This document shows, one piece after another, positions 5,130 through 56,415 of a stretch of 64,000 nt of DNA (position 1 is its first letter; each line of letters opens with the position of its first letter). Origin of the DNA: Sphaerodactylus townsendi. Lineage: Eukaryota. The stretch spans positions 88,846,001 through 88,910,000 of the forward strand of contig NC_059434.1 of NCBI RefSeq assembly GCF_021028975.2, in the 5' to 3' direction. A program made the translations under genes and the position numbers. The notes beneath the pieces were generated by a model. That model was not told the origin of the DNA. It ran no database searches and worked only from the letters and a program-made list of their open reading frames with translations.

Positions 5130-5897
5130 TGGCAGCTGTGAAAAAGGCAAACTCTATGCTGGGGATAATTAAGAAAGGAGTTGATAATAAAACTGCAAGG
5201 ATTGTCATGCCCTTATTTACAAGCAGTGGTGCGACCGCACTTGGAGTACTGTGTTCAGTTCTGGTCGCCACATCTCAAAAAGGATCCTGAAGAGATAGAA
5301 AAAGTGCAGAGAAGGGCAACGAGGATGACTGAGGGACTGGAGCACCTTCCTTATGAGGAGAGGCTGCAGCGTTTGGGACTCTTTAGTTTGGAGAGGAGAT
5401 GTCTGAGGGGGGATAGGATTGAAGTCTATGAAATTATGCATGGGGTAGAAAATGCCGAACGAGAGAAATTTTTCTCTCTTTCTCACAATACTAGAACCAG
5501 GGGGGCATTCATTGAAAATGCTGGGGGGAAGAATTAGGACTAATAAAAGGAAACACTTCTTCACGCAACGTGTGATTGGTGTTTGGAATATGTTGCCACA
5601 GGAGGTGGTGATGGCCACTAACCTGGACAGCTTTAAAAAGGGCTTGGACAGATTGATGGAGGAGGGGTCAGTCTATGGCTCCCAATCTTGATCCTCCTTG
5701 ATCTGAGATTGCAAATGCCTTAGCACAGACCAGGTGCTCGGGAGCAGCAGCAGCAGCAGCAGCAGAAGGCCATTGCTTTCACATCCTGCATGTGAGCTCC
5801 CAAAGGCACCTGGTGGGCCACTGAGAGTAGCAGAGTGCTGGACTAGATGGACTCTGGTCTGATCCAGCAAGGCCATTTCTTATATTCTTATGTTCTA
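5130..5897 (+). mobile_element. CR1 LINE, 5'-truncated 3' end
   Basis: ORF2 C-terminus [19 protein letters not shown]...VQRRATRM...YEERLQRLGLFSLERR followed by a CR1-type 3' UTR ending TTCTTATGTTCT. Confidence 0.9.
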
Positions 5898-11024: not shown

Positions 11025-11647
11025 GAGATATAGGATGGGTGACACCTGGCTTGACAACACTACATGTGAAAGGGATCTAGGACTCTTAGTAGACCATAAA
11101 CTGAACATGAGTCAGCAGCGTGATGTGGCAGCCAAGACAGCCAACGCGATTTTGGGCTGTATCAATAGGAGTATAGTATCTAGCTCGAGGGATGTAATTG
11201 TACCTCTCTCCATTGGTTAGACCTCACCTGGAATATTGTGTCCAGTTCTGGGCACTGCAACTCAAGAAGGATATGGACAAGCTGGAACGGGTCCAGAGGA
11301 GGGCAACCAAAATGGTGAAAGGTCTGGAGTCCATGCCCTACGAGGCGAGACTGGGGAAGCTGGGGATGTTTAGTCTGGAGAAAGAAATGTTAAGGGGTGT
11401 CATGATAGCCATGTTTAAAGATTAGAAGGGATGTCATGTTGAAGAGGGAGCAAGCTTGTTTTCTGCTGTCTCAGAGATTTGGACACAGAGTATTGGATTC
11501 AAGTATTGGAATTTCTTGACCGTCAGAGCTGTTGGACAGTGGAATGCACAACCTCAGAGAGTTGTGGAGTCTCCTTCTTTGGAGGTTTTTAAACAGAGGC
11601 TGGATGAACATAATGTGTCGAGAGTGCTTTGATGGTGTGTTCCTGAA
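11025..11647 (+). mobile_element. CR1 LINE 3' fragment (interrupted; resumes at ~13681-13695 and ~14745-14788)
   Basis: [18 protein letters not shown]...[12 protein letters not shown]...[12 protein letters not shown]. The 3' UTR resumes after two insertions and ends CCAACTCTATGATT. Confidence 0.88.
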
Positions 11648-19305: not shown

Positions 19306-19436
19306 NNNNNNNNNNNNNNNNNNNNNNNNNNNNNNNNNNNNNNNNNNNNNNNNNNNNNNNNNNNNNNNNNNNNNNNNNNNNNNNNNNNNNNNNNNNNNNN
19401 NNNNNNNNNNNNNNNNNNNNNNNNNNNNNNNNNNNN
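19306..19436. other. Assembly gap (131 N)
   Basis: Run of N. Confidence 1.
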
Positions 19437-30071: not shown

Positions 30072-32170
30072 ATGGAGCCCCTGGGGCTGGAGCCGGAGGG
30101 GGCCGTTCCCTCGCAGCAAGCCCCGCCGCAGCCCATTCGATTCGGCATCGACCAGATCCTGGGGGGGCCGCAGACGCACCAGCTCCAGACCAGCGCGTGC
30201 CTGGCCGCCGTCGGGGAGCAGCGGGGCGACTCGGAGGGGGCGCTTTTCGGAGGCGCCTACGGGGCGGACTGCAGCCTGTCCTGCCGCCGGGGGGACTATG
30301 GGCTCCCGGGGGCCCCGGCGGGCAGCGGCGGAGTGATCCGAGTCCCCGCTCACAGGCCGGTAGCCCTCACCGCCCTCCAGCCTCCGCCGGGGGGAGCCGG
30401 CATCACCTTTCCTTGGGGGGAGAGCGGCGGCGGCAGGCTGGCCAAGGAGCGCCTGGCAGGTGAGAAACGGTCCTCCTCAGCTCCCCCCCCCCCCGCCCCG
30501 CCTTTCCGCACCGGCCGGGTGGCCGCGTCTTCGCAGGAGAGGAACGGAGCCTCCGGCTCGGGGCCCTTTCCCTCCTCCGCCCGCCCTCCCCTCTCCCCAA
30601 AGGGCGCGCGCTTGGGTGACCTGGAGCGGAGTCAGGTGTACCTGCACCCCCGCCGGGCCTGCGCCCTTTCAACCCCCGAAGGTGAGCCGAGCCACCCCCA
30701 CCCTCCTTCGCCTGCCCAGCCCGAACCGCGGAGGGCTCCGCTGGGAGAGGCCGGATTCCAGGAGAAGGCGGGGACGAGCTCTCCCGGGGGCAGCTGCAGA
30801 GCTGGGGAGAGGCCGGGCCCTTGGCTGGGGGGCGCGGAGGAAGGCGCCACTGGCCGTGCTCGGGGGTGTGCTGGGGCCGGGGCGAAGGGCGCGGGGCTGG
30901 CCTCGGGGGAAGCGGCGGCCCTCTCGCAAGGACAGTCCGCTCCTGCCGCCGCCAGAAACTGCCCCGGCTCCCCCAGTTCCGCAGACTTCGCCATGCTGGG
31001 GGCGGGAGGTGCCCCCTCCTTCCAGCCAAACTCGCGAGGAGACCGTACCCCCAGCGTTCAAGGGCGAGGAGGGGGCTGGACCCCGGGAGTCAGCCTGACT
31101 GGGGGAAAGGACGAGGGTGCTGCTGAGGGTGACGCTCCCCCCCTCTCATTCTTGCTGTGTCCGCAGCAGCCGCGCTCCCGTCCCTGGGCGCGGGGGCGCG
31201 GCGGGTGGGCCACCCCTACCAGAACCGGACGCCGCCCAAGCGCAAGAAGCCGCGCACGTCCTTCTCGCGAGCGCAGACCTGCGAGCTGGAGAAGCGCTTC
31301 TACCGGCAGAAGTACCTGGCCTCCGCCGAGAGGGCCGCGCTGGCCAAGGCCCTCAAGATGACCGACGCCCAAGTCAAGACCTGGTTCCAGAACCGCCGCA
31401 CCAAGTGGCGGTAGGCCGGGGAGGGGCGGAGGGGCGGGGCGCTGAGCCTCCCGCACTGGACCCGGGCGCGGGGGGCGGGTTAGGGATCCCACGGGGGGGG
31501 GGGCGGCCTCGGAAGGCGCCCTCCTTCCCCAGCGCTGTATCGGCCTCCTTCGCCCAGTAGTCTAGGCTGAGAAAGCGGCCCCGCCAAGCCTGCGAGAGGC
31601 AGCTGGCTGACTGGCCTTCCTTACAGGGGTGGTGGGCCAGCGATTGCCCCGTTGTCACCGGCCCTTCGGCCACAGGTGCCTCATTCTGGAGAGAGGCCGG
31701 CCTGGCGTAGCTTCCCGTGGGGGCCGCTGTGCGGCCACCTTTGTCCTGGGTCCTACGCTAGAGAGTCAGGGGCTGGGGGGGGGGGTGAGGGCGGGGCTGG
31801 CGGTCAGACCCTCGCTGTGAGTCCCGCTGGGCCGGCCAGCCAGCCGCCTCTGCTCTCACCCCCGCGCACGGGCGGGCGGGCGGGCGGGCGGGCTGGCGAG
31901 CCTCCGAGGCGAGCGGGGGGCTGACGTGGCGGCCTTTTGGTCCCCCGCAGGCGGCAGACGGCCGAGGAGCGCGAGGCGGAGCGCCAGCAGGCCCACCGGC
32001 TGGTTCTGCACCTGCAGCAGGAGGCCTTCCAGAAGCGGCTGGGCCCGCCGCGGCAGCAGGACCCGCTCTGCCTGCACAACGCCTCCCTCTACGCCCTGCA
32101 GAACCTGCAGCCCTGGGCCGAGGAGAACCCCCCCGCCGCCACCGCCTCCGGGGCAGCCGGGCTCGTGTGA
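30072..32170 (+). CDS. TLX2: T-cell leukemia homeobox 2 (3 exons, 282-283 aa)
   Basis: Exons 30072-30459, 31167(or 31170)-31410, 31951-32170. eh1 motif FGIDQIL, TLX motif [13 protein letters not shown] hexapeptide, homeodomain RKKPRTSFS...[15 protein letters not shown]-terminal [19 protein letters not shown]. Paralog assigned by its position between PCGF1 and DQX1. Confidence 0.93.
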
Positions 32171-32252: not shown

Positions 32253-32258
32253 AATAAA
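32253..32258 (+). terminator. TLX2 polyadenylation signal AATAAA
   Basis: AATAAA ~80 nt after the TLX2 stop, followed by GT-rich sequence. Confidence 0.75.
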
Positions 32259-33068
32259 GTGTCATAAAGTGCGCTGTCCGTGGCTGCAAGTGTGGCCCGT
32301 GGGACTGGTTCCTGGGAAAGCGCGTGCCGCGGCCTTGGCTTCGGTGCCCCCCCCCCCCCAGGGCCCGCACTCAACACCCCTCCCCTCAGTGCTGGCGGGA
32401 CCTCCCAGGAGCTCATCCAGGCAGTTGGAGATCCGGCCTCTTCCGCCTGCTGGCGTCTTTGGGAAGGATGCCCGTTCAAGCAGAGATGGGCTGTCAGAGG
32501 TTCCGTTGGCAACTGAGAACCTCTCCCCCCACACGCACGCACACTGGCCTGCACTGCAGGGCACATCCCAGGGGCCTCCTGCCTGCCACGTGCTTGGCGG
32601 CCGGGGCCGCAGTTCCAAGGAAGCAGAGAAGGAAGGGGAGTGGGCTGGGGCGGGAGGGCGGCGGGTGACTCGCCCCAGGGCCGGGTGTGGATGCCCTGAT
32701 TGATCCAAAGGCGACCGGCCGCCGCCGCCGCCCTCACCTTGTCTGGCATCTGCCTCTCGCAGGCTGGGCGGGGGTCTGGGCAGCTCAGGAGGGCCCCCCC
32801 TCTCCGCCAGCCTCCCGCAAAACCCCCCACCCCATCGCCTCCTTCGACTGCATCCTGCTGGGCGCGGAGCCACCGTGAGGGATGAGGCCGTCTCCAGCAC
32901 CCCCCCCCCGCCCCCCTCGTTGCCCAGGTGATGGTTGGGGCGGGTAAGAAATGACGTTCCAGGCCGCTGAACAGCCCGGCCTGCACCCCCCCCCCCGCAA
33001 AGACACGCGGCAGCTCATGGGAGGGGGGGCTCATTCAGTAAAGGCCGCCTCCTCTGCGGCGCGCTCTG

Positions 33069-33092
33069 ATTGGCCGCCGCGGCCCTATATAG
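33069..33092 (+). promoter_or_regulatory. Core promoter of the intermediate filament gene (inverted CCAAT + TATA)
   Basis: ATTGG at 33069-33073 and TATATAG at 33086-33092, about 80 nt upstream of the ATG at 33168 (AGGATGG, good Kozak context). Confidence 0.7.
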
Positions 33093-33167
33093 AGCGGGCG
33101 CTCCGGCGCAGTGCCTTCGCCCTTGGCGCAGAGGTCGGCTCCCGGCGCCGCGGCCCGTGTGGGCAGG

Positions 33168-36100
33168 ATGGGCTCGGAGGCCTTTGGCTGGCGGCGGGCG
33201 CCGTCCTCGTCGGAGGAGGAGAAGTGCCGCGGCGGGGGCCGGCGGGCTGTGCGGCGGGGCGCCCCCTGGGCTGCCAGGCGGCCCTTGAGCGGCGAGCCGG
33301 GCCCGGTGGCCGATCCTCTGGAGCGCCTGGATTTGGCGCAGGTGAGCAGCTTGAACGCGGAGCTGCTGGGCCTGCGCGCCCAGGAGAAGGAGCAGCTGGG
33401 GGGCCTCAACGACCGCTTCGCCACCTACGTGGAGCGGGTGCGCCAGCTGGAGCGCCGCCACCGGGCCCTGCGCCTGGAGCTGGAGGAGCTGCGCCGCCAC
33501 GAGCGCACCCCGGCGCGCCTGCCCCAGCTGTACCAGCACGAGGTGCGCGGCCTGAGGGCGCTGCTGCAGGCCGAGGAGGGCGACCGGGCGCGCCTGGAGA
33601 CCCAGCGCCAGCGCTTGCGCCACACCTGCGCCCAGCTGCGCGAGTGCTGCGCGCAGGAGGAGCGCCGGCGCCTGGACGCCGAGGAGGCGCTGGGCCGAGT
33701 CCGTCAGGAGGCAGCCCGGGCCGTTCTGGCCGCCCGCGACGCCGACGGGGCGGCCGGCTCGCTGAGCGCCCAGCTGGCCTTCCTGCAGAGGCTCCTGGCC
33801 CAGGAGCGCGCCGAGCTCGCCGAGCAAGCCGACCTGGCCGCGGCCGCGCGGGCGGCGCTGGTGGCGGGAGGAGCCCCGGCGGGGGCGGCCAAGCAGCCCG
33901 ACCTGGCGACGGCCCTGCGCGACATCCGCGCCCAGTACGAGTGCCTGGCGGCGCAGAACATGCAGGCGGCCGAGGAATGGTACCGCTCCAAGTTCGCCTC
34001 GGTGGCCCAGCTGGCCGGACGCAACCAGGAGGTCGTGCGCGGCATCCGCCAGGAGACGATGGAGTGCCGGCGCCTGCTGCAGTCGCGCTCGGCGGAGATC
34101 GAGGCCCTGCGCGGCGCCGTCGACTCGCTGCACCGGCAGCTGGAGGGCCTGGAGGGGGAGCAGAGCGCCCAAGTGGCCCGTTGCCAGGTAAGCGGCGGGA
34201 TGGGGGTGGGCAGCAGAGGAGCTAGCCGGCGTCCTGTCGCCGCAGCTGCGGGGCCCTCCTGAACTGCCCAGACCCCCCCCCTTCCTTCTGAGCTCCTTCT
34301 GCGTGTTGGGAGAAGCACACCTGGTGCGTGTGTTTCCCTTGCAAAAGTAGCAGAGCGGCACAGAGGCTGAACACAGGGAAGCTTACCTGGGCACACAGGC
34401 CTGGCTGAGCTTGCTAGAGAGAACTTCAGACACGAAAGAAAGTCAGAGTCGTTTGTAGTTTCTAATCCAATAAAAATAGTATTTATTAGTGAACTTCATT
34501 CTGGATAGAAAGATGGAGAGACAGGTTCACTAACTATTCTATTCTAGCTGGATGGAGGCAGATGCTCGAAACATGCATCCTCTCCCTAGGCATGGTGAAG
34601 GTAAGATGGAGAAGTTCTGAGAAGAAGGCGGAAGCAAGGGAGGAAGTCCCTGAGAGTATCAGTCTACATCAAAGGGATAGAGTCAGCATGATAGAGTAAA
34701 GGTGACAAATTCCTAAGCCCCTATCTAGCCACTAGCTCGCTAGTAAAAATGAGGCAGGAAACAGGATGAGGCAGGAAACAGCGTAAAGTCCCTTCTTCCA
34801 ACACTGCGGTCCCTTGACTGGGGGGTGGGCGGCAAGGCGGGCATCATCAGCTCCCTGGTGCCACCTGCCCTTTCCCAGTGGAACCCGGCCTCTCCGGGCG
34901 AAGGGCTTTGTCCGGTGTGGTCTCTCTGCACTCTTTCCCCGCTGTGTCTGCCTGATGTCTTGGGGTGGGTCCATTGCTGAGCCTCTCCCCCCCCCCCCCC
35001 CGGCCCCCAATTCTTGCTAGGGAGTTTGGAATTCCCTGAAGAAAGGGGTGGGCTGAAATGGCTGGCTGGACTCCTTGGATGAGGAAGGGATTACAGCCGT
35101 CTGGCTCTGAGATTTGGGTAGTGGGAGATTCAGTCATTAGGAATATAGGGCAAGGAACGGCATGCTCAGCAGGGCCTGATGCAACTCCACAAGGCCTGCA
35201 CCACTGGGCTGTTGTGCCAGGCCTGTGATTGAGGGCAAGGACAGTTTCCATCTTGCTGCCTCCCCTCTTTTCCTTATCGTTTGACTATCCTTATTGGCTT
35301 TATCTTGTCATAGAATCATAGAGTTGGAAGAGACCCCCCCAAGGGCCATCCAGTCCAACCCCTGCAATGTCCCTTCCTTGTGACTGAGCCCATCTCTGGT
35401 TTTGGTGCCTTTAGTTTTTGACTTTTATAGCTGAGGTTTTACTGTATTTATGTATTTAAATTGTGTTTTATGCATTGTTGGAACCTGCCCTGAGCCCAAC
35501 TTTTTGGGAACAGGCAGAACATAAAGTCAAACAAACAAATAAATACATTGAACTCAACTGCTGGAGCACTGAAGTCTCATTCGCTCCATGATGGTTTTGA
35601 TGGAGAAGCTTTCTGAGAGAGATGTACCCTTCGCAAGGCCAGGGCTGTTCCAAAGTTAAGTCTGAACTGAAATGACAGGATCTGCAATCTAGAGCCTCAA
35701 CAGCTGCTAAGTTCTGCTGCAAGATACGGTCATTTCAGGAACAAGAAATGGGTGCTGCCAAACTTTCTGGCTAATGCATGGATTCCCATTTGGCCCATCC
35801 CCGTGCTCTTCCTTCCACTGTGTTCAAAGGGAGATACTGTGTTGTTGTGCCACTTTTATGCCCTTCCACTCCTGGGAACATTGAAATGGCTGGACACGTG
35901 CTGCTGCATTGTCCCTTTGCAGAATCATAGAGCAGAACCATAGAGTTGGAAAGGATCTTGGAGGCCATCTAGTTAACGCTGATCAATGAAGGATCATCCC
36001 AGAGCATCCCTGACAAGTGTTTGTTCAGCTGCTGCTTAAAGACTCCCAGTGGGATGAGGCTCACCCCCTCCCTAGGCAGCCCGTTCTGTTGCTGAACTGC

Positions 36101-39100
36101 TCTGACTGTGTCTTATCGAAGGCTTTCACGGCTGGATTCAACTGGTTGTTGTGGGTTTCCCGGGCTGTGTGGCCGTGGTCTGGTAGATCTTGTTCCTAAC
36201 AGATGCAGGCGAAATGTTAGGAACAAGATCTACCAGACCATGGCCACGCAACCTGGAAAACCCACAACAACCAGTACTCGGACTGTAATTTTGTTCCCTT
36301 AATATTCAGTCGGAACCTTTCTGCCCATAATTTAAAGCCACTGTTGTGAGTGCTGCCCTCAGGAACAGCTCCCTGTGCTCCACTTAGTGACGGCCCTTCA
36401 GATATTTCAAGAGAGCCCTTCTGTCCCCCCTCAACCTCCTGTTTTCCAGGCTAAACATTCCCATGTCCTCCCCCAGCCTTTTCTTGGAGGGCTTGGTCTC
36501 CAGGCCCCGGGAGCCTCCTTGTGGCTGTCCTTTGCCCCCGCTCCATTCTTCAGTGTTCATCTTATGATTAGGAGCTCATGTCTCTGTTGATGCACCTCAA
36601 GATCGTATTGACCTTTTTTCCTTCTAGAACACACAACACCCACGGCTACTCATATGTAGCTTACATTCCACCCATTCCCCAAGATCTTGTTCACACACAG
36701 TGCTATCCAAAAGTCTGTTCCCCCTACAGTATGCTTGGTTCTCATTTTTGTTACCCACTAGAGTATGTTTCATTTCTTTTATGCATTTGTTGTCAGAAAT
36801 GGTGGGGGGTTTCCCACCTACCATGTATTTACAAGGATGGCTTGATTCCCCTGTCCCCAGAACACACCAATAAAAGCAACTGGCTGTACTTAAAAGATTA
36901 AAGAAGAGGTGCAGGCTTACACACAAGGCAACGTTAATCTAGGTGCAATGAAATAATAAATCTAGCTTCCTGAAATACACGGGCAGATTTCTAGGCAAGC
37001 AGATTTCAACATCTTCAAATTAGCAAAAGCAATTAGTCTTTGGCCCATCACTGGTCCCAATAATATTATTGAACCATGCATTGAAACTTGAGCCAGATGG
37101 TTATAGGAAACTGGACTGCTGACCCCTTAACCGTGATCCAAAAGGTGATTCTGGAAGGAAAGCAAGATTCTTCCCTCCCACCTCACATAGCGGAGAGTAG
37201 TTCAGTCAGGTTGCTTTGACATTCAAAGGGTGATCTCAAGCTCTGTTCTTTACCACCTGACTTTACACTTCCCCTCCCCCACCGCTAACCTCTAACCTGC
37301 TACAAGTCAGAGGTGCCATCAAATCACCTCTGACTGACTTCAACCCCTGGCCAGAGGTTTTCAAGGCAAGAGTGGTTCAGAAGTGGTTTGGCAGGGTTGA
37401 TGTTGCTTAGAGATCTTCTGAGATCTGAGGCATAATAATGACCTTAGATATACTCATGATGCCCGTCTCCCCCAAAATCACGGGGTGGGGGGGAGATTGT
37501 CTTCTTGCAGACCTAGAATATGAAACTGCAGATAGAGAGAGATGCCACATTTTGTGCACATTCTATACAACTGTCAGAATCGTCCAAGGCGTACACGGCT
37601 GATTCAGTGACATGTATTTGCTTTTAGATAAATACTTTAATGGAATAGCCAGCTAGGTAGTTAGATAGTTATAACCACTTTGTTAATGTATGCTTTATTC
37701 TACTGGACCATAATAAATTGTTAAATTGAATTAAACTGCAATGCATGTCAGACATCTGATTTCAGTGCCCCACTCTACCCCATATTGACCGGCAGAACAA
37801 AGAGGGAACTTCCTTAAGTTAATGCAGTATACAAAATAAAGCACAACTCTTTTTATTAGACAAGAATGTAATAAATATAGACATGTGCAGGCTAATCCCA
37901 CAAGTACAGGAAAACAGTGTTGGCAGGGTGTGAGCACACAGCGAAGTGGCAGGTTCAGCCGATTTCAGATAAAGGTAAATATTTATTTGGGAACTACATT
38001 ATAGATAGAAAAACTGAGATAGGGATAGATCGCCTCTTGCTACCTTGCTGGCGAGGGAGAGAGAGAAACAAGAAAGCTTCCAAGAGGAAAGAGGGCCTTG
38101 CCCTGACCATATCAGTCTATGCAGACAGACAAGAGCATGAATGCGCCTTAATTTTACAGACCTATCTAGCTGACCGCTTGCCTGCCCTCTGCAGGTGGTT
38201 CTTCTAATTTCTTTGCATGCTAGACATTGCTAATCGCAACAAAAAATGCATGCAGTAAAAACCAGATCTTCTAGCATTCCTCAAGCATAACTAAATCACG
38301 ATAGTTCTCTAAGACGAAGGATTGAAGATGAAAGGCAGAATGATACTCAAAAGAGAAAGGCCACCATATCAGATATGCTCACACTACTTAGGGTCTTCTC
38401 CAACAGGACCCCAGCAGAAACTCTTGATTAGACCCCAGTATGACTCTTCACCGAGACACTGCGGGAACAGCAATAAACATTCTGAACTTTAACACACAAT
38501 TGTCCTCTGAATAAAAAACACAAAATAAGAAATAAAACAATATCACAAGGTATTTTGCAAACAGGTGGTCTAGAAAACATCTTGTTAACTCCCATTTTAG
38601 AGTCTTGGAGCAAAGTCTAAAATGGGCCCTTGTTCATTAAAGAGTCAGCTGTTTATCAGCAGCACTAATGGAGGGTCCGGGTGAGAGGCAGTCCTGCCCT
38701 TCTGTCTCCAAACATCTTACCAGCAGGGCCTGGTCCCTGGCCTCCAAGGCTACAGATGTATCCCACAGGAGCCACAAAGAGGCCAGGTTTTTCTCTGATG
38801 TGGAAGATGGAAAAGATCAGCTAAGGAGGCCTGAAGAAGGGCCCGGAGCAGCTGCTGAATCACCTCGCACCCACAGCCCTCCCACAACCCCCAGGGCCTC
38901 CATCCAGATGCTCAGAAAGAGCAGGTTGGAGATGGGGGGTGGGGGATGCAAGTCAGATGTGGCCAATGAGATGGAGTGGAGGCTGCTCGATCATCTGCTG
39001 TCTTCCGTGCAATGCACGCTGTGCAAGTGGATCTGGACCCAGGACTCTCCAGTCCAGATCAGGCACTCCAGTAAGGACTGGGCTACCCTGGGTCCTCAGG

Positions 39101-41396
39101 CAGTGGGGGCATCAGAAGGTGTGAGGGTGCAGGAATCCTGACCCACAGAGCCCAGGGCTGGGATCTTGCCCGTTCGTTCGTTCGTTCGTTCGTTCATTCG
39201 TACACATAAATCCCAGCCTGGGGTGGGGTGGGTAGAGGGCAGGTTTGGGAAGGGGTCTCTTTAAAGAAATGAATGTTGCAGTGGCTGTGGAGGGGAGAGA
39301 TGCGGCTCACTCCGTGTTTATTCCAGCCTGAAAGGGCTTTCCTCAGGGGCTTGCTGTATGGAAGGAGATGGGGCTGACGGCATGGCTTTGTGGGTTGCTG
39401 GTGGGCTCTGGGGCACACTCTCCTCTTCTGTTCCCCCACTTCTGTAGGAAAGAGTGGTGGAGCTGGAGCAGGAGATCTCGGAGGCCAAGGAAGAGATGGC
39501 CCGCTACATGCGCGAGTACCAGGAGCTGCTGAACATCAAGATGGCTCTGGACATTGAGATCGCTGCCTACAGGTTAGGCCTTTCTGCCCAGGGGATGGGT
39601 AGAATCACAGAGCTGGAAGAGACCCCAAGGGCCATCAAGTCCAAACCCATGCCATGCAGGAACACACAATCAAAACACTCCTGTGGTCATCCAGCCTCTC
39701 TCTTTAAAAACCTCCAAAGGAGGAGACTCCAACACACTCCGAGGGAGCGCATTCCACTGTGGAACAGCCCCGACAGTCAGGAAGTTTTTCCTGATGTTGA
39801 GGTGGAATCTCTTTTCCTTCACCTTGGACCCATGACTCCGTGTCCTGGTCTCTGGAGCAGCAGAAAACAAGCTTTCTCCCTCACCAACAGGACATCCCTT
39901 CAAATACCTAAACATGGCTATCATGTCCCCCCTTAACCTTCGCTTCTCCAGACTAAACCTCCCCAGCTCCCTCAGTCTCTCCTCGTAAGGCATGCATTCC
40001 AGACCTTTCACCATTTTGGTTGCCCTCCTCTGGACCCGTTCCAGCTTGTCCATATCCTTCAATTGCAATGCCCAGAACTGAACACAGTACTCTAGGTGAG
40101 GTCTCACCAATGCAGAGTAGAGTGGTACAATTACTTCCCTTGATCTAGACACTATAATCTTATTGATGCATCCCAGAATTGCACTGGCTTTCTTGGCTGC
40201 CATGTCACGCTGCTGACTCATGTTCAGTTTGTGGTCTACTAGGACTCCCAGATTCAGGGTAGTCCCTGAAAACCACAGCTGCAAAGACCAAATACCAGGG
40301 GAGGGGCTTGATGGTGGGTACAGAGGAGGAGGAAGGGGAAGAAGAGGCTTGGAGAGGAAGAGATGAGGGAGAAGTCTGGATGCTTAGAATCAGAGAGTTG
40401 AAAGGGCCTACAGAAGCCCTTTGGTCCAACCTCCTGCTCAAGGCAGGATCACTCTGAAGCACCCCTGGCAAAGTCTTTGTCCAGCTACTGTTTGAAGACT
40501 GCCAGTGAGGGGCCTGGGGGGGGGGGCTCATTGCCTCTCTAGGCAGCTTGTTTCACTGCTGAACAACCCTTACTGTAAAGGAAAAATAATCCTAATATTT
40601 TATTTATGTGACTTAATAGACTGCCCCTCTCCTTTCTGTTTGTAATTTCTGCCCATCATTGCGAGGCCGACAGGAAGAGCCTCTAAGGGACAGCCCTTCA
40701 AATACTTCAAGAGAGCAATCATGTGTGTGCCCCCCCACCTCTTCGTCTCCATCTTGAACACCCCCAAGTCCCACAGCCTTTCCTCCAGGGGCAAATCGAC
40801 AAGTCATGTGAACAATAGAGCAGTTACAGAATTTAAAGATTAATGCAAAAATTATTTTAATATTTTCATGAAATAAAAAGTGGAGGAGGGGGGAGATGAC
40901 ATGGTATGTTTTAAAAGACTTTTTAAAGAGGAAAAACCCTGGGTATGGATTCAGTTTCTGGAAACTATGGAAATTTATTCTTACATTTATCACTATTGCT
41001 ATTATTACTTAGTGGAATGTAACCTTTTGAGAGTTAAAACTCTCTTCATCAGATATGAGCTGGAACTGAGGTCCTTGAATTCTTATTTCCCAGACAGGTG
41101 GTGGGAGGGCGCTGCAGAGGAGGAACGCAGGATGCACAGGTGCAATGTGCATGGCCATTAGCTTGATTGGAGCTGGAGATAAATGCTCCTGGGGCAGAAA
41201 ATCAGAATACCTGGGGTGGTCATCCAGATATATATAAAGTGCCAATCAATTCAACTGCAGCAATCTCACACGGTTATCTCCTCTTGAAGCTCTTCTGTCT
41301 GAGGACAGTGGTCACTCTTAGGTCAGAAACAAAATGCCCCTGGAAGATGGAGCTTGGGAAAGCAAGATCAGTGTACTTCTGGGGGGATGACTGGTA

Positions 41397-41445
<49 letters not shown>

Positions 41446-41523
41446 TCTCCCCCCCTTTACAGGAAACTACTGGAAGGAGAAGAGTTGTGGTGGAATTCTT
41501 CTTCACAAATGACACTAAAATGA
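33168..41523 (+). CDS. Type IV neuronal intermediate filament protein (alpha-internexin / neurofilament-light-like), 3 exons, 401 aa
   Basis: Exons 33168-34187 (1020 nt, donor CAG|GTAAGC), 39448-39572 (125 nt, TAG| ... |GTTAGG), 41463-41523 (CAG|). Coil 1A start [10 protein letters not shown]...[47 protein letters not shown], rod end [20 protein letters not shown]|KLLEGEE. A long first exon, a 125-nt second exon and an intron inside AYR/K is the type IV IF gene structure. Confidence 0.93.
34304..34803 (-). mobile_element. Solo LTR (500 bp) in intron 1 of the IF gene
   Basis: TGTTGG...CCAACA termini and perfect 5-bp TSD CTGCG. Confidence 0.88.
35925..36790 (-). mobile_element. Degenerate CR1 fragments
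   Basis: Reverse-strand CR1 3' end (AGAATCATAGAG...ATAGAGTTGGAAAGG) and residual [12 protein letters not shown]...KLHMS. Confidence 0.6.
36108..36275. mobile_element. Short non-autonomous element with long inverted arms (Penelope-like); related pieces at ~23260-23300, ~23455-23510, ~24690-24800, ~42130-42745, ~44350-44490
   Basis: GAAGGCTTTCACGGCTGG head, then inverted arms TGGTTGTTGTGGGTTTCC...GTTCCTAAC / GTTAGGAAC...CCCACAACAACCA; recurs within the window. Family assignment is from recall. Confidence 0.6.
39598..40250 (-). mobile_element. CR1 LINE 3' fragment in intron 2 of the IF gene
   Basis: [14 protein letters not shown]...[19 protein letters not shown]...[23 protein letters not shown]...RKNFLTV. 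Confidence 0.92.
41399..41442 (+). repeat. (CT)n microsatellite forming the polypyrimidine tract of IF gene exon 3
   Basis: Pure CT repeat ending ~20 nt before the AG at 41461-41462. Confidence 0.9.
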
Positions 41524-42698: not shown

Positions 42699-43829
42699 AA
42701 AATGACCAGACTGTGGCCACACAGTCTGGGAAACTCACAACAGCCACTTTGCAAGATTTTTTCCGTACCTTTTCACAGAGCCTTCCTGCCATTATGGACC
42801 TCACATCCCTGAAAATAATGTTTAGGGGGAAACAACACACAACCACAAATAAAGAAAACTTGTGCGTGTGTGTGCGTGTGTGATGGGTGTGTGTGTCTGT
42901 CACAAGCCCAAATGGACCCCCTGCTTCCAATCTGTTCAGGCCCCAGGCCCTGGGAAGCCCGAGTGCTGCCACACATGAGCTCTGGCCCCCTCCTGATTTA
43001 GGGGGGTGGAACCTCAAGCTATGACCCCCTCAGCTCCACAAGCATCTGTGGAGCTGAGGGAGAGCTGCCATGCGCAGCCCAGAGGATTTTAGAGGGGACC
43101 ACTAGCCTTTGGAGCACCCTCTTGATCTTAAGCATCTGGGGAAGACTTCTCCCCCCCCCCCCCACCTGTAGCTATTCTGGGGCTATTGGGAAGCTGCCCA
43201 GCCTCCCTCCCACCAATACAGGACTGCTCCCCCTCCCAGTCTACTGGCCCTGGAGTCATTTGCCTCCACCAGACCTTGAACAGGGAAGGGTTGTGTGGGG
43301 CACTCTGTGGGCCAGGACGAGTGCTCATGCCCTCCCCCCTCCCCACAGGGGCTGGGATGCACACAGCGCACAAAAGCATCCAGGTCCCTGGCCTGGCAGC
43401 CGTTCAGCACCTGGACTGAATCTCTGCACTTTTTAACAGACAATGTTTTCAACTATTATTCTAAGGTAACTACAAAAAAAAAATACACATTTTTAAACAA
43501 ATGAACGTGGAAAGGCCTGGGGCAGCTCCCCCTCCCCACACCATGTCACGGCAGCACTATTGTCCACATTTTGTGTGTAGCAGAAGCACATCAATTAAAA
43601 AAGTGGAACTAATCTGTGTTTTGAGACTCTTGCAAATTTGGGGGCTTCTGAGTGCGGATGTGGGTTTGGGGGGATTTGACTTCTGCAGCTGTTTAGGACT
43701 TTATTCGTGACTTGGTCCTGCCTCCAGTTTCGCAGGGCCTCCCCCCAGCCCCCCTTTCTCCTTTCCAGCCCTCCTTTCTCCTTTCCTCATAGGGTCCACA
43801 GCAGGTATTCTCTCCACACAGTGACCCTG

Positions 43830-47646: not shown

Positions 47647-56415
<8,769 letters not shown>

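What the first reader, a model, noticed from the sequence alone, without database searches (positions are those of the whole stretch)
33069..41523. Extra intact type IV neuronal intermediate-filament gene between TLX2 and DQX1, absent from this locus in human
Seen: a 3-exon gene with CCAAT/TATA promoter, canonical splice sites and an uninterrupted 401-codon frame with all IF rod signatures and type IV exon structure (1020/125/61 nt). Known: in human, TLX2 and DQX1 are direct neighbours, and the mammalian neuronal type IV genes (NEFL, NEFM, NEFH, INA) lie elsewhere. INA sits next to PCGF6 on the 10q arm that also carries TLX1, LBX1, DHX32 and HTRA1. Inference: this is a whole-genome-duplication paralog of INA/NEFL kept in the TLX2/LBX2 paralogon of squamates and lost in mammals, i.e. 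a poorly characterised extra neurofilament-class subunit, possibly related to Xenopus XNIF.
Basis: partly seen in the sequence, partly recalled or inferred. Interest (0 to 1): 0.9.

Follow-up and report, generated by a model that had tools for sequence, protein, structure and literature searches.

The report
Tail-less neurofilament-light paralog lost in mammals
The gecko window holds a real, already annotated three-exon gene for a nearly tail-less intermediate-filament protein: an old sister of neurofilament-light that fishes, salamanders, caecilians, turtles and lizards keep beside TLX2 and that humans lack there, with tissue and function still unknown.

Summary
Exons at 33168-34187, 39448-39572 and 41463-41523 (1020/125/61 nt, GT-AG introns) encode 401 residues with a full intermediate-filament rod. 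RefSeq already has the identical protein as "alpha-internexin-like [Sphaerodactylus townsendi]".

- **Family:** it belongs to a well-separated group of 390-400 aa proteins with a 12-residue tail. Members occur in teleosts, Amia, coelacanth, caecilians, salamanders, turtles and squamates. Databases call the fish members "neuronal intermediate filament family member 2".
- **Relationship:** rod trees place the group as sister to NEFL (UFBoot 99). They do not place it inside INA or NEFL. It is not XNIF: the gecko has its own XNIF-type gene on another chromosome.
- **Location:** synteny is conserved. Geckos show TLX2, this gene, DQX1; eel shows it near an HtrA-type gene; medaka shows nanos, this gene, a LOXL gene. 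A whole-genome-duplication origin is plausible but unproven.
- **Selection:** dN/dS among squamates is 0.30-0.46, so selection is purifying but relaxed. The head evolves almost neutrally.
- **Gaps:** no RNA run was on record, so expression in the gecko and the label "neuronal" are untested.

Verdict: a real gene and an uncharacterised member of a known family.

The parts
33067..33073 (+). inverted CCAAT box (TGATTGG) of the core promoter
   Evidence: Read. Invariant in Sphaerodactylus, Paroedura and Hemicordylus in the alignment.
33086..33092 (+). TATA box (TATATAG), 82 nt before the ATG
   Evidence: Read. Conserved in three squamates. The transcription start about 30 nt downstream is inferred, not observed.
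33168..34187 (+). exon 1 coding part: head (about 60 aa), coil 1A, coil 1B, linker L12 and most of coil 2; 340 codons
   Evidence: Pfam Filament E 3e-53. 100% identical to P0001. Donor GT.
34188..39447 (+). intron 1 (5260 nt), phase 0, rich in high-copy repeats
   Evidence: GT..AG ends. Repeat depth. Genomic contigs run across the exon 1/intron border.
39448..39572 (+). exon 2, 125 nt: end of coil 2 up to the first two bases of the Arg codon of YRKLLEGEE
   Evidence: Pfam Filament E 1e-13. The same 125-nt exon occurs in five orthologs and in the gecko's XNIF-type gene.
39573..41462 (+). intron 2 (1890 nt), phase 2; holds a 204-aa open frame on the minus strand (39670-40284) and ends in a (CT)n tract
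   Evidence: That frame has no Pfam hit.
41463..41523 (+). exon 3 coding part, 61 nt: KLLEGEE, a 12-residue tail and TGA
   Evidence: Tail length is the same in squamates, medaka and eel (61-nt exon). The tortoise exon is 52 nt.
42848..42853 (+). first AATAAA on the + strand after the stop codon: candidate polyadenylation signal (3' UTR about 1.3 kb)
   Evidence: Motif only, not supported by reads.
31202..31411 (+). upstream neighbour: TLX-type homeobox exon (TLX2)
   Evidence: Pfam Homeodomain E 1.7e-21. Motif scan. Paroedura and Hemicordylus also have a homeodomain gene just upstream.
51483..52763 (-). downstream neighbour: open frame that contains the DEAQ-box exon of DQX1
   Evidence: DEAQ motif at about 52664. 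In Paroedura the downstream gene on the minus strand carries HA2 and OB_NTP_bind helicase domains. The raw frame gave no Pfam hit.

Best explanation
This is the Sphaerodactylus townsendi member of an old vertebrate gene family. Databases call the fish members 'neuronal intermediate filament family member 2'; I call the family NIF2 here.

Shown:
- It encodes a 401-aa intermediate-filament protein with a basic head of about 60 aa, a complete rod and only 12 residues after KLLEGEE.
- It has the type IV gene layout.
- NIF2 is a separate lineage whose sister is NEFL.
- It occupies the TLX2-DQX1/HTRA2/LOXL3 block from teleosts to lizards.
- In squamates it is under purifying but relaxed selection.

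Inferred:
- The gene arose with the early vertebrate duplications of the Lbx/Tlx paralogons. It was later lost in mammals, and probably also in archosaurs and frogs.
- Like other type IV proteins, it forms parallel coiled-coil dimers through its rod. It is built into 10-nm filaments as a backbone subunit that adds no side-arm.
- It most likely does this as a co-polymer with NEFL, INA or the XNIF-type protein in neurons. There it would change subunit stoichiometry and filament spacing rather than form a filament system of its own.
For: - Gene model and promoter.
- Identical RefSeq protein P0001.
- Orthologs at 44-74% identity, 380-408 aa, in squamates, turtles, caecilians, salamanders, coelacanth, Amia and many teleosts.
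- Same exon layout in two geckos, Hemicordylus, tortoise, medaka and eel (exon 1 of 993-1020 nt, exon 2 of 125 nt, exon 3 of 52-61 nt).
- Trees of 65 rods: NIF2 monophyly 100/100, NIF2+NEFL+lamprey NF-L 97.5/99. PMSF-C20 quick tree gives 98. The grouping holds at 96.6 SH-aLRT and aBayes 1.0 after removing the compositionally odd squamate rows and three long branches.
- AU test rejects NIF2 with the XNIF clade (p 0.032) and NIF2 outside all other type IV genes (p 0.021).
- Separate genes in geckos: NEFL of Paroedura and Gekko; XNIF-type gene of S. townsendi on a 59-Mb chromosome against 89 Mb for this gene.
- Synteny: Paroedura homeobox gene, this gene, helicase; eel with tubulin and a 451-aa Trypsin+PDZ protease downstream; medaka nanos, this gene, mrps26, LOXL. 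The medaka order matches the Nanos1-Loxl3 duplicate of the Lbx2 paralogon in PMC2446394.
- Selection: pairwise dN/dS 0.30-0.46, rod 0.25-0.43. pN 0.147 against pS 0.284 for the two geckos, z about 5 by my arithmetic.
- Congener: about 1.4% divergence in exon 1 against 2.2-3.4% in the intron, with one in-frame 3-nt deletion.
- Transcripts elsewhere: full-length spliced products sit on short assembled contigs of a turtle-like taxon and of teleosts. P0020, for example, is 388 aa on a 1961-nt contig.
Against: - No RNA run of this species was on record. The four runs laid are genomic DNA. Transcription, the two junctions and the tissue are therefore unobserved in the gecko.
- The squamate lineage evolves fast. 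Its stem branch is 0.36 changes per site, against path lengths of a few hundredths among squamate NEFLs.
- The head has dN/dS of 0.45-1.1 and no longer matches Pfam Filament_head, which the coelacanth ortholog does match.
- GC3 is 0.91, so dS and dN/dS are distorted.
- Two unnamed relatives (P0174 near geckos, P0168 near turtles) have internal deletions and damaged rod motifs, so the gene may be decaying in some lineages.
- Co-assembly partners and neuronal expression rest only on homology with type IV proteins.
Confidence: 0.72

Rival explanations
1. The gene is real and old, but in squamates (or in this gecko) it is sliding towards loss. The frame is still open, constraint is largely gone, and the protein no longer does a filament job.
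For: - Long squamate stem branch.
- dN/dS up to 0.46 overall and about 1 in the head.
- Loss of the Filament_head match.
- Degenerate relatives P0174 and P0168.
- No RNA evidence.
Against: - The frame is open and all splice sites are intact in at least 13 named squamate species from distant families.
- Rod dN/dS is 0.25-0.43 and clearly below 1.
- CCAAT and TATA boxes are invariant between geckos and Hemicordylus.
- The only indel seen in the congener's exon 1 is in frame.
- The helix initiation and termination motifs are intact.
Confidence: 0.1
2. The family is the positional and phylogenetic sister of INA, not of NEFL. The NEFL grouping would then be an artefact of the long NIF2 stem.
For: - AU test does not quite reject NIF2+INA (p 0.055, delta lnL 26.9).
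- NCBI names several members 'alpha-internexin-like'.
- Rod identities of the coelacanth protein to NEFL, INA and XNIF-type proteins are all 47-56%.
Against: - NIF2+NEFL is recovered with FastTree, PMSF-C20, LG+F+G4 with UFBoot 99 and the reduced data set.
- NEFL has a short stem, so it is not an obvious long-branch attractor.
Confidence: 0.1
3. The protein is a working filament subunit, but not of neurons. It could be in lens, glia, muscle or germ cells, as with the tail-less lens protein phakinin.
For: - No expression data of any kind were found for this family.
- The known tail-less filament proteins are non-neuronal (PMC2290875, listed).
Against: All its nearest relatives (NEFL, INA, XNIF-type, NEFM) are neuronal by established knowledge. 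The database family name says neuronal, but that name is itself by homology.
Confidence: 0.2
4. It is simply the gecko's INA or NEFL gene moved to a new place, with no other copy in the genome.
For: Automatic names only ('alpha-internexin-like', 'neurofilament light polypeptide-like').
Against: - The family is a 100/100 clade outside NEFL and INA.
- Paroedura has NEFL (P0396), an XNIF-type gene (P0436) and this gene (P0006).
- Rhinatrema and Ambystoma have INA as well as this gene.
- The locus is conserved from fish to lizards.
Confidence: 0.01

Closest known systems
NEFL (neurofilament light polypeptide)
   Same: Sister lineage in all trees. About 54% rod identity. Same pre-coil LDLSQV-type segment and the RLS motif right after KLLEGEE in the non-squamate members. 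The shared type IV intron positions are from my knowledge of NEFL, not tested here.
   Different: NEFL has a Glu-rich tail of about 150 aa; this protein has 12 residues after KLLEGEE. NEFL evolves very slowly in squamates and this gene fast. NEFL sits on another chromosome, next to NEFM (human 8p21, from knowledge). Geckos have both genes.
XNIF, the Xenopus low-molecular-weight neuronal intermediate filament ('neuronal intermediate filament family member 1', zgc:65851)
   Same: A type IV-class light subunit that mammals lack. It shares the 125-nt exon and the intron inside the Arg codon before KLLEGEE. About 52% rod identity.
   Different: It is a separate clade (96.8/100) that includes X. laevis XNIF and a second S. 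townsendi gene, P0438. It has a tail of about 80 aa and one extra intron, with exons of 747/318/125/253 nt. It lies on the same contig as NEFL in several reptiles.
INA (alpha-internexin; fish gefiltin, frog xefiltin)
   Same: A light type IV protein. It lies in the Lbx1/Tlx1 paralogon (10q24, from knowledge), which is paralogous to the Lbx2/Tlx2 region where this gene lies (PMC2446394).
   Different: It is a distinct clade (99.7/92) and has a tail of about 90 aa. It coexists with this gene in caecilians and salamanders.
Tail-less intermediate-filament proteins: phakinin/CP49 (BFSP2) and keratin 19
   Same: The protein ends almost at the end of the rod. Such proteins are known to work as partners in heteropolymers (phakinin with filensin: PMC2290875 and PMC2199861, listed).
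   Different: They are unrelated lineages (lens beaded filament, type I keratin) with other gene structures. The resemblance is functional analogy only.

Membership tests
Intermediate filament proteins (Pfam PF00038) | Central alpha-helical rod of about 310 residues matching the Filament profile end to end | tested here: met
   P0001 residues 72-389 match profile positions 1-311 of 313, E 8e-78. Exon-wise E values are 3e-53 and 1e-13.
Intermediate filament proteins (Pfam PF00038) | Helix initiation motif (LNDRF...) and helix termination motif (...YRKLLEGEE) | tested here: met
   Both were read in the translation. The only length difference from relatives is 7-8 extra residues in linker L12.
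Type IV (neurofilament-class) genes | Few introns at type IV positions: one long first coding exon, a 125-nt exon, and an intron inside the Arg codon before KLLEGEE | tested here: met
   Exons are 1020/125/61 nt. The same 125-nt exon and split Arg codon occur in the gecko's XNIF-type gene and in five orthologs. Identity of these positions with NEFL and INA rests on my knowledge, not on a test here.
Type IV (neurofilament-class) genes | Expression in neurons | not testable with these tools
   No RNA run holds the stretch. The runs laid are genomic DNA. No paper on the family was found.
NEFL orthologs | Falls inside the NEFL clade and is the only NEFL-like gene of the genome | tested here: not met
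   It is sister to, not inside, NEFL plus lamprey NF-L. Paroedura and Gekko have a separate NEFL of 563-564 aa.
NEFL orthologs | Long acidic tail | tested here: not met
   There are 12 residues after KLLEGEE. The NEFL rows have tails of about 140-240 residues.
INA orthologs | Falls inside the INA clade | tested here: not met
   INA is a separate clade, 99.7/92. A sister position is marginal (AU p 0.055).
XNIF / neuronal intermediate filament family member 1 | Groups with Xenopus XNIF | tested here: not met
   The XNIF clade (96.8/100) holds X. laevis P0474 and S. townsendi P0438, not this gene. AU p is 0.032 against a sister position.
'Neuronal intermediate filament family member 2' orthogroup (si:dkey-33c12.3) | One clade with the fish proteins of that name; 390-400 aa; tail of about 12 residues; three coding exons | tested here: met
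   Clade support is 100/100. Names and lengths are, tails, exon layout.
'Neuronal intermediate filament family member 2' orthogroup (si:dkey-33c12.3) | Conserved place in the TLX2/DQX1/HTRA2/LOXL3 block | tested here: met
   Window, Paroedura, Hemicordylus, eel, medaka, read against PMC2446394. Tortoise and Amia had no informative neighbours within 10 kb.
2R ohnolog of NEFL/INA | The paralogs lie in different Lbx/Tlx paralogons and the split dates to the two vertebrate genome duplications | tested here: inconclusive
   The location is met. This gene is in the Lbx2/Tlx2 region. NEFL lies in the Nkx2.6/Loxl2 region and INA in the Lbx1/Tlx1 region, both from knowledge, with the paralogon map. Timing is not resolved: lamprey NF-L groups with NEFL at only 77/95, and no cartilaginous-fish member was identified.

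The most novel reading that the evidence does not exclude
NIF2 is one of the surviving 2R ohnologs of a single ancestral light neurofilament gene, alongside NEFL, INA and perhaps the XNIF-type gene, each in its own Lbx/Tlx paralogon. It has been a naturally tail-less 'core only' subunit for more than 400 million years. It tunes neurofilament composition in fishes, urodeles, caecilians, turtles and lizards. It was lost independently in mammals, archosaurs and frogs, so the mammalian neurofilament quartet would be a reduced set.
Probability: 0.3. Interest if true: 0.55.

Novelty: new member of a known kind. Interest (0 to 1): 0.42.

Why it matters
Neurofilament biology is built on the mammalian set (NEFL, NEFM, NEFH, INA, PRPH). 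This gene shows that the ancestral jawed-vertebrate set was larger. It included a light-chain paralog that ends right after the rod and that many non-mammalian lineages still keep.

A natural tail-less relative of NEFL is a ready-made test of what the light-chain tail does in filament spacing and assembly. Zebrafish and axolotl have the gene, so it can be knocked out and imaged.

The locus also adds a marker to the Lbx/Tlx paralogons used to reconstruct the early vertebrate genome duplications.

The gene model itself is not new: RefSeq has it, and databases already give the fish orthologs a family name.

Tried and rejected
- **RNA evidence:** The look-up of sequencing runs found no RNA run. 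The four holders are genomic DNA of this species and a congener, so read laying showed no splice joints. The joints it lists lie in intron repeats.
- **Short contigs as transcripts:** I first took the short Logan contigs P0011, P0013, P0014 and P0019 for squamate transcripts. They are exon 1 read through into intron 1, that is genomic, and I dropped them as evidence.
- **Unnamed basal relatives:** P0139 and P0140 could not be traced to an organism or a locus. Whether sharks, birds or mammals have the gene therefore stays open.
- **Synteny look-ups:** coelacanth P0100 had no locus on record. Tortoise and Amia loci had no useful neighbours within 10 kb. The neighbour of the gecko XNIF-type gene is a SCAN-KRAB zinc-finger gene, which does not identify a paralogon.
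- **Careful tree:** the careful PMSF tree did not finish in 480 s on one CPU. I used its quick version plus my own LG+F+G4 run.
- **Other searches:** the ESM Atlas look-up gave only 'Chordata'. Literature searches for the family names, si:dkey-33c12.3 and type IV evolution found nothing on this gene. The one hit for 'dkey-33c12' is a different gene.
- **Rejected readings:** chance open frame, translocated INA or NEFL, XNIF ortholog.
Full report
**Observation.** The frame opens at the ATG at 33168, which has A at -3 and G at +4.
- Exon 1 runs to 34187 (1020 nt) and is followed by GT.
- Exon 2 is 39448-39572 (125 nt) between AG and GT.
- Exon 3 starts at 41463 after an AG that follows a (CT)n tract, and reaches TGA at 41521-41523.
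- The codon split by intron 2 is the Arg of YRKLLEGEE. The total is 401 codons.
- An inverted CCAAT box (33067-33073) and TATATAG (33086-33092) precede the ATG. Both are invariant in Paroedura picta and Hemicordylus capensis.

Frame length alone means nothing here, because the 73% G+C exon 1 also carries chance frames of 424 and 448 aa. The Pfam Filament profile settles it: E 3e-53 on exon 1 and 1e-13 on exon 2.

For whole-protein work I used the database record P0001. One search returned it, and my script matched it piece by piece to the three exons.

**Identity.** P0001 is 401 aa, 100% identical to exon 1, and named 'alpha-internexin-like [Sphaerodactylus townsendi]' by NCBI. The window is therefore from this gecko, and the gene is already annotated.

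The other hits form a family of 380-408 aa proteins:
- 13 or more squamate species at 62-74% identity;
- turtles at about 50-55%;
- three caecilians, two salamanders, coelacanth, Amia and many teleosts at 44-55%.

UniProt calls the fish members 'Neuronal intermediate filament family member 2' or si:dkey-33c12.3. NCBI's automatic names vary (NEFL, NEFL-like, alpha-internexin-like, even GFAP-like and vimentin).

Members end about 12 residues after KLLEGEE; the tortoise tail is nine. On the whole protein the Filament profile covers residues 72-389 of 401. The same three-exon layout holds in two geckos, Hemicordylus, a tortoise, medaka and eel: exon 1 of 993-1020 nt, exon 2 of exactly 125 nt, exon 3 of 52-61 nt, all GT-AG. 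The tail-less state is therefore ancestral to the family, not a truncation in the gecko.

**Phylogeny.** A search of 1.84 billion cluster representatives with the coelacanth member supplied the other type IV and type III lineages. Cluster look-ups and two more named searches labelled them. I built trees on 65 rod domains.
- The family is monophyletic at 100 SH-aLRT / 100 UFBoot on a long stem.
- It groups with NEFL plus lamprey NF-L at 97.5/99 under LG+F+G4 and at 98 SH-aLRT under the PMSF-C20 quick search.
- The grouping survives removal of the compositionally odd squamate rows and three long branches (96.6, aBayes 1.0).
- INA (99.7/92), the XNIF clade (96.8/100) and NEFM/NEFH (100/100) are separate.
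- AU tests reject a sister position to the XNIF clade (p 0.032) and a position outside all other type IV genes (p 0.021). A sister position to INA is not quite rejected (p 0.055). The constrained trees came from fast searches, so these p values are rough.

The protein does not nest inside INA or NEFL.
- Geckos have a separate NEFL (Paroedura P0396, Gekko P0402). I did not retrieve the S. townsendi NEFL record itself.
- XNIF is a different gene. The clade with X. laevis XNIF (P0474) contains 'low molecular weight neuronal intermediate filament-like [S. townsendi]' (P0438, 480 aa). That gene lies on a 59-Mb chromosome, against the 89-Mb one that carries the window gene.
- The XNIF-type gene has exons of 747/318/125/253 nt. 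It shares the 125-nt exon and the split Arg codon, which supports the type IV classification of both.

**Synteny.**
- In the window, a TLX-type homeobox exon lies at 31202-31411 (+). A DEAQ-box exon of DQX1 lies near 52664 (-).
- Paroedura has the same order: homeodomain gene, filament gene, HA2/OB-fold helicase on the minus strand. Hemicordylus has the homeodomain gene upstream.
- In eel the gene is followed by a tubulin gene and a 451-aa Trypsin+PDZ protease without N-terminal extra domains, which is HTRA2-like.
- In medaka the order is nanos, filament gene, mrps26, then an SRCR/lysyl-oxidase gene. That matches the 'Nanos1 linked to Loxl3' duplicate of the Lbx2 paralogon described by Wotton et al. 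2008 (PMC2446394).

The same paper states that human TLX2 is flanked by DQX1, AUP1, an HTRA gene, LOXL3 and DOK1. It also defines four Lbx/Tlx paralogons marked by LOXL4 (10q24), LOXL2 with NKX2-6/NKX3-1 (8p21), TLX3 (5q35) and LOXL3 (2p13). From established knowledge, INA lies in the first and NEFL/NEFM in the second. The gene studied here lies in the fourth. This fits an origin with the early vertebrate genome duplications, but it does not prove it. The deep nodes are weak, and I identified no cartilaginous-fish member.

**Distribution.** No bird, crocodilian, mammal, frog or shark appears among the 120 hits listed, of 165 that passed the threshold. Frogs, crocodilians and sharks are plentiful for the XNIF-type gene, and birds and mammals for NEFL. 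This suggests losses. Two unnamed basal relatives (P0139, P0140) could not be traced.

**Selection.** Nei-Gojobori estimates, made exon by exon and summed:

| Region | dN/dS among Sphaerodactylus, Paroedura and Hemicordylus |
|---|---|
| Whole coding sequence | 0.30-0.46 |
| Rod | 0.25-0.43 |
| Head | 0.45-1.1 |

- For the two geckos, pN is 0.147 and pS is 0.284, a difference of about 5 standard errors by my arithmetic.
- GC3 is 0.91, which limits synonymous change and probably inflates these ratios.
- In genomic contigs of a congener, exon 1 differs by about 1.4% and intron 1 by 2.2-3.4%. The exon-1 changes listed are 5-6 synonymous and 4 non-synonymous, and the one exon indel is an in-frame 3-nt deletion in the L12 linker.
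- The squamate stem is long (0.36), and the gecko head no longer matches Pfam Filament_head, unlike the coelacanth head.

Constraint is real but relaxed, and it is strongest on the rod.

**Expression.** No RNA run holds the stretch. The four runs laid are genomic DNA, because their contigs run across the exon 1/intron border. The two junctions and the tissue therefore remain untested in the gecko.

Indirect support comes from other taxa. Full-length spliced products sit on contigs too short to hold the introns. P0020, for example, is 388 aa on a 1961-nt contig and is nearest to turtles. Several teleost contigs do the same, one of them with 162 member sequences.

**Mechanism (inferred).**
- The intact helix initiation and termination motifs, and a rod whose only length change is in linker L12, predict a normal parallel coiled-coil dimer that can enter 10-nm filaments.
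- With 12 residues after the rod, it cannot contribute a side-arm.
- By analogy with other tail-less filament proteins, which work as partners in heteropolymers, the likeliest role is a backbone co-subunit. It would dilute tail-bearing type IV subunits.
- That the cells are neurons is inferred from the relatives alone.

**Novelty.** The gene and its family are in public databases, but I found no paper on them. It is an uncharacterised member of a well-known family. The interest is evolutionary (a light-chain paralog lost in mammals) and practical (a natural tail-less relative of NEFL).

**Rules.** The N run at 19306-19436 was left alone.

Noticed in passing
window 31202-31411 (+) and 32253-32258 (+): A TLX-type homeobox exon (Pfam Homeodomain E 1.7e-21). 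An AATAAA lies about 830 nt before the filament gene's TATA box. The two genes are therefore packed head to tail within roughly 1 kb.
   Followed up: partly
window 51483-52763 (-): An open frame holding the DEAQ motif of DQX1 at about 52664. The raw frame gave no Pfam hit, probably because it mixes exon and intron.
   Followed up: partly
window 35164-35360 and 35952-36345 (intron 1): Very high-copy repeats. Summed contig word depth is 10^5 to 10^6 in all four genomic runs, against about 25-120 for unique sequence. Many repeat-derived 'joints' appear in the reads tables.
   Followed up: no
window 39670-40284 (-), intron 2: A 204-aa open frame that looks by eye like the C-terminal part of a LINE reverse transcriptase. 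Similar peptides occur at 5169-5534 and 11198-11422 on the + strand. It has no Pfam hit.
   Followed up: partly
window 41396-41442: A (CT)n microsatellite, continued by a short C/T-rich stretch to 41458, lies just upstream of the exon 3 acceptor and serves as its polypyrimidine tract.
   Followed up: no
window 34059, 33141-33149, 33097: Variation within the species (run X2): A>G at 34059 (Met298Val, also seen in the congener), a 5-nt deletion and a C>T in the 5' UTR, and a 1-nt insertion just downstream of the TATA box.
   Followed up: partly
proteins P0174 and P0168 (unnamed): Relatives of the family with internal deletions and damaged rod motifs. P0174 groups with Eublepharis and P0168 with Emydura. 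They may be decaying copies or poor gene models in some geckos and turtles.
   Followed up: partly
L008:10001-16668 (S. townsendi XNIF-type gene): The gecko's XNIF ortholog has four coding exons (747/318/125/253 nt), one intron more than the window gene. Its downstream neighbour is a SCAN-KRAB zinc-finger gene.
   Followed up: yes
The XNIF-type gene may belong to the NEFL/NEFM chromosome.
   Followed up: no
window 19306-19436: A run of 131 N (assembly gap or masked stretch). It was left untouched.
   Followed up: no
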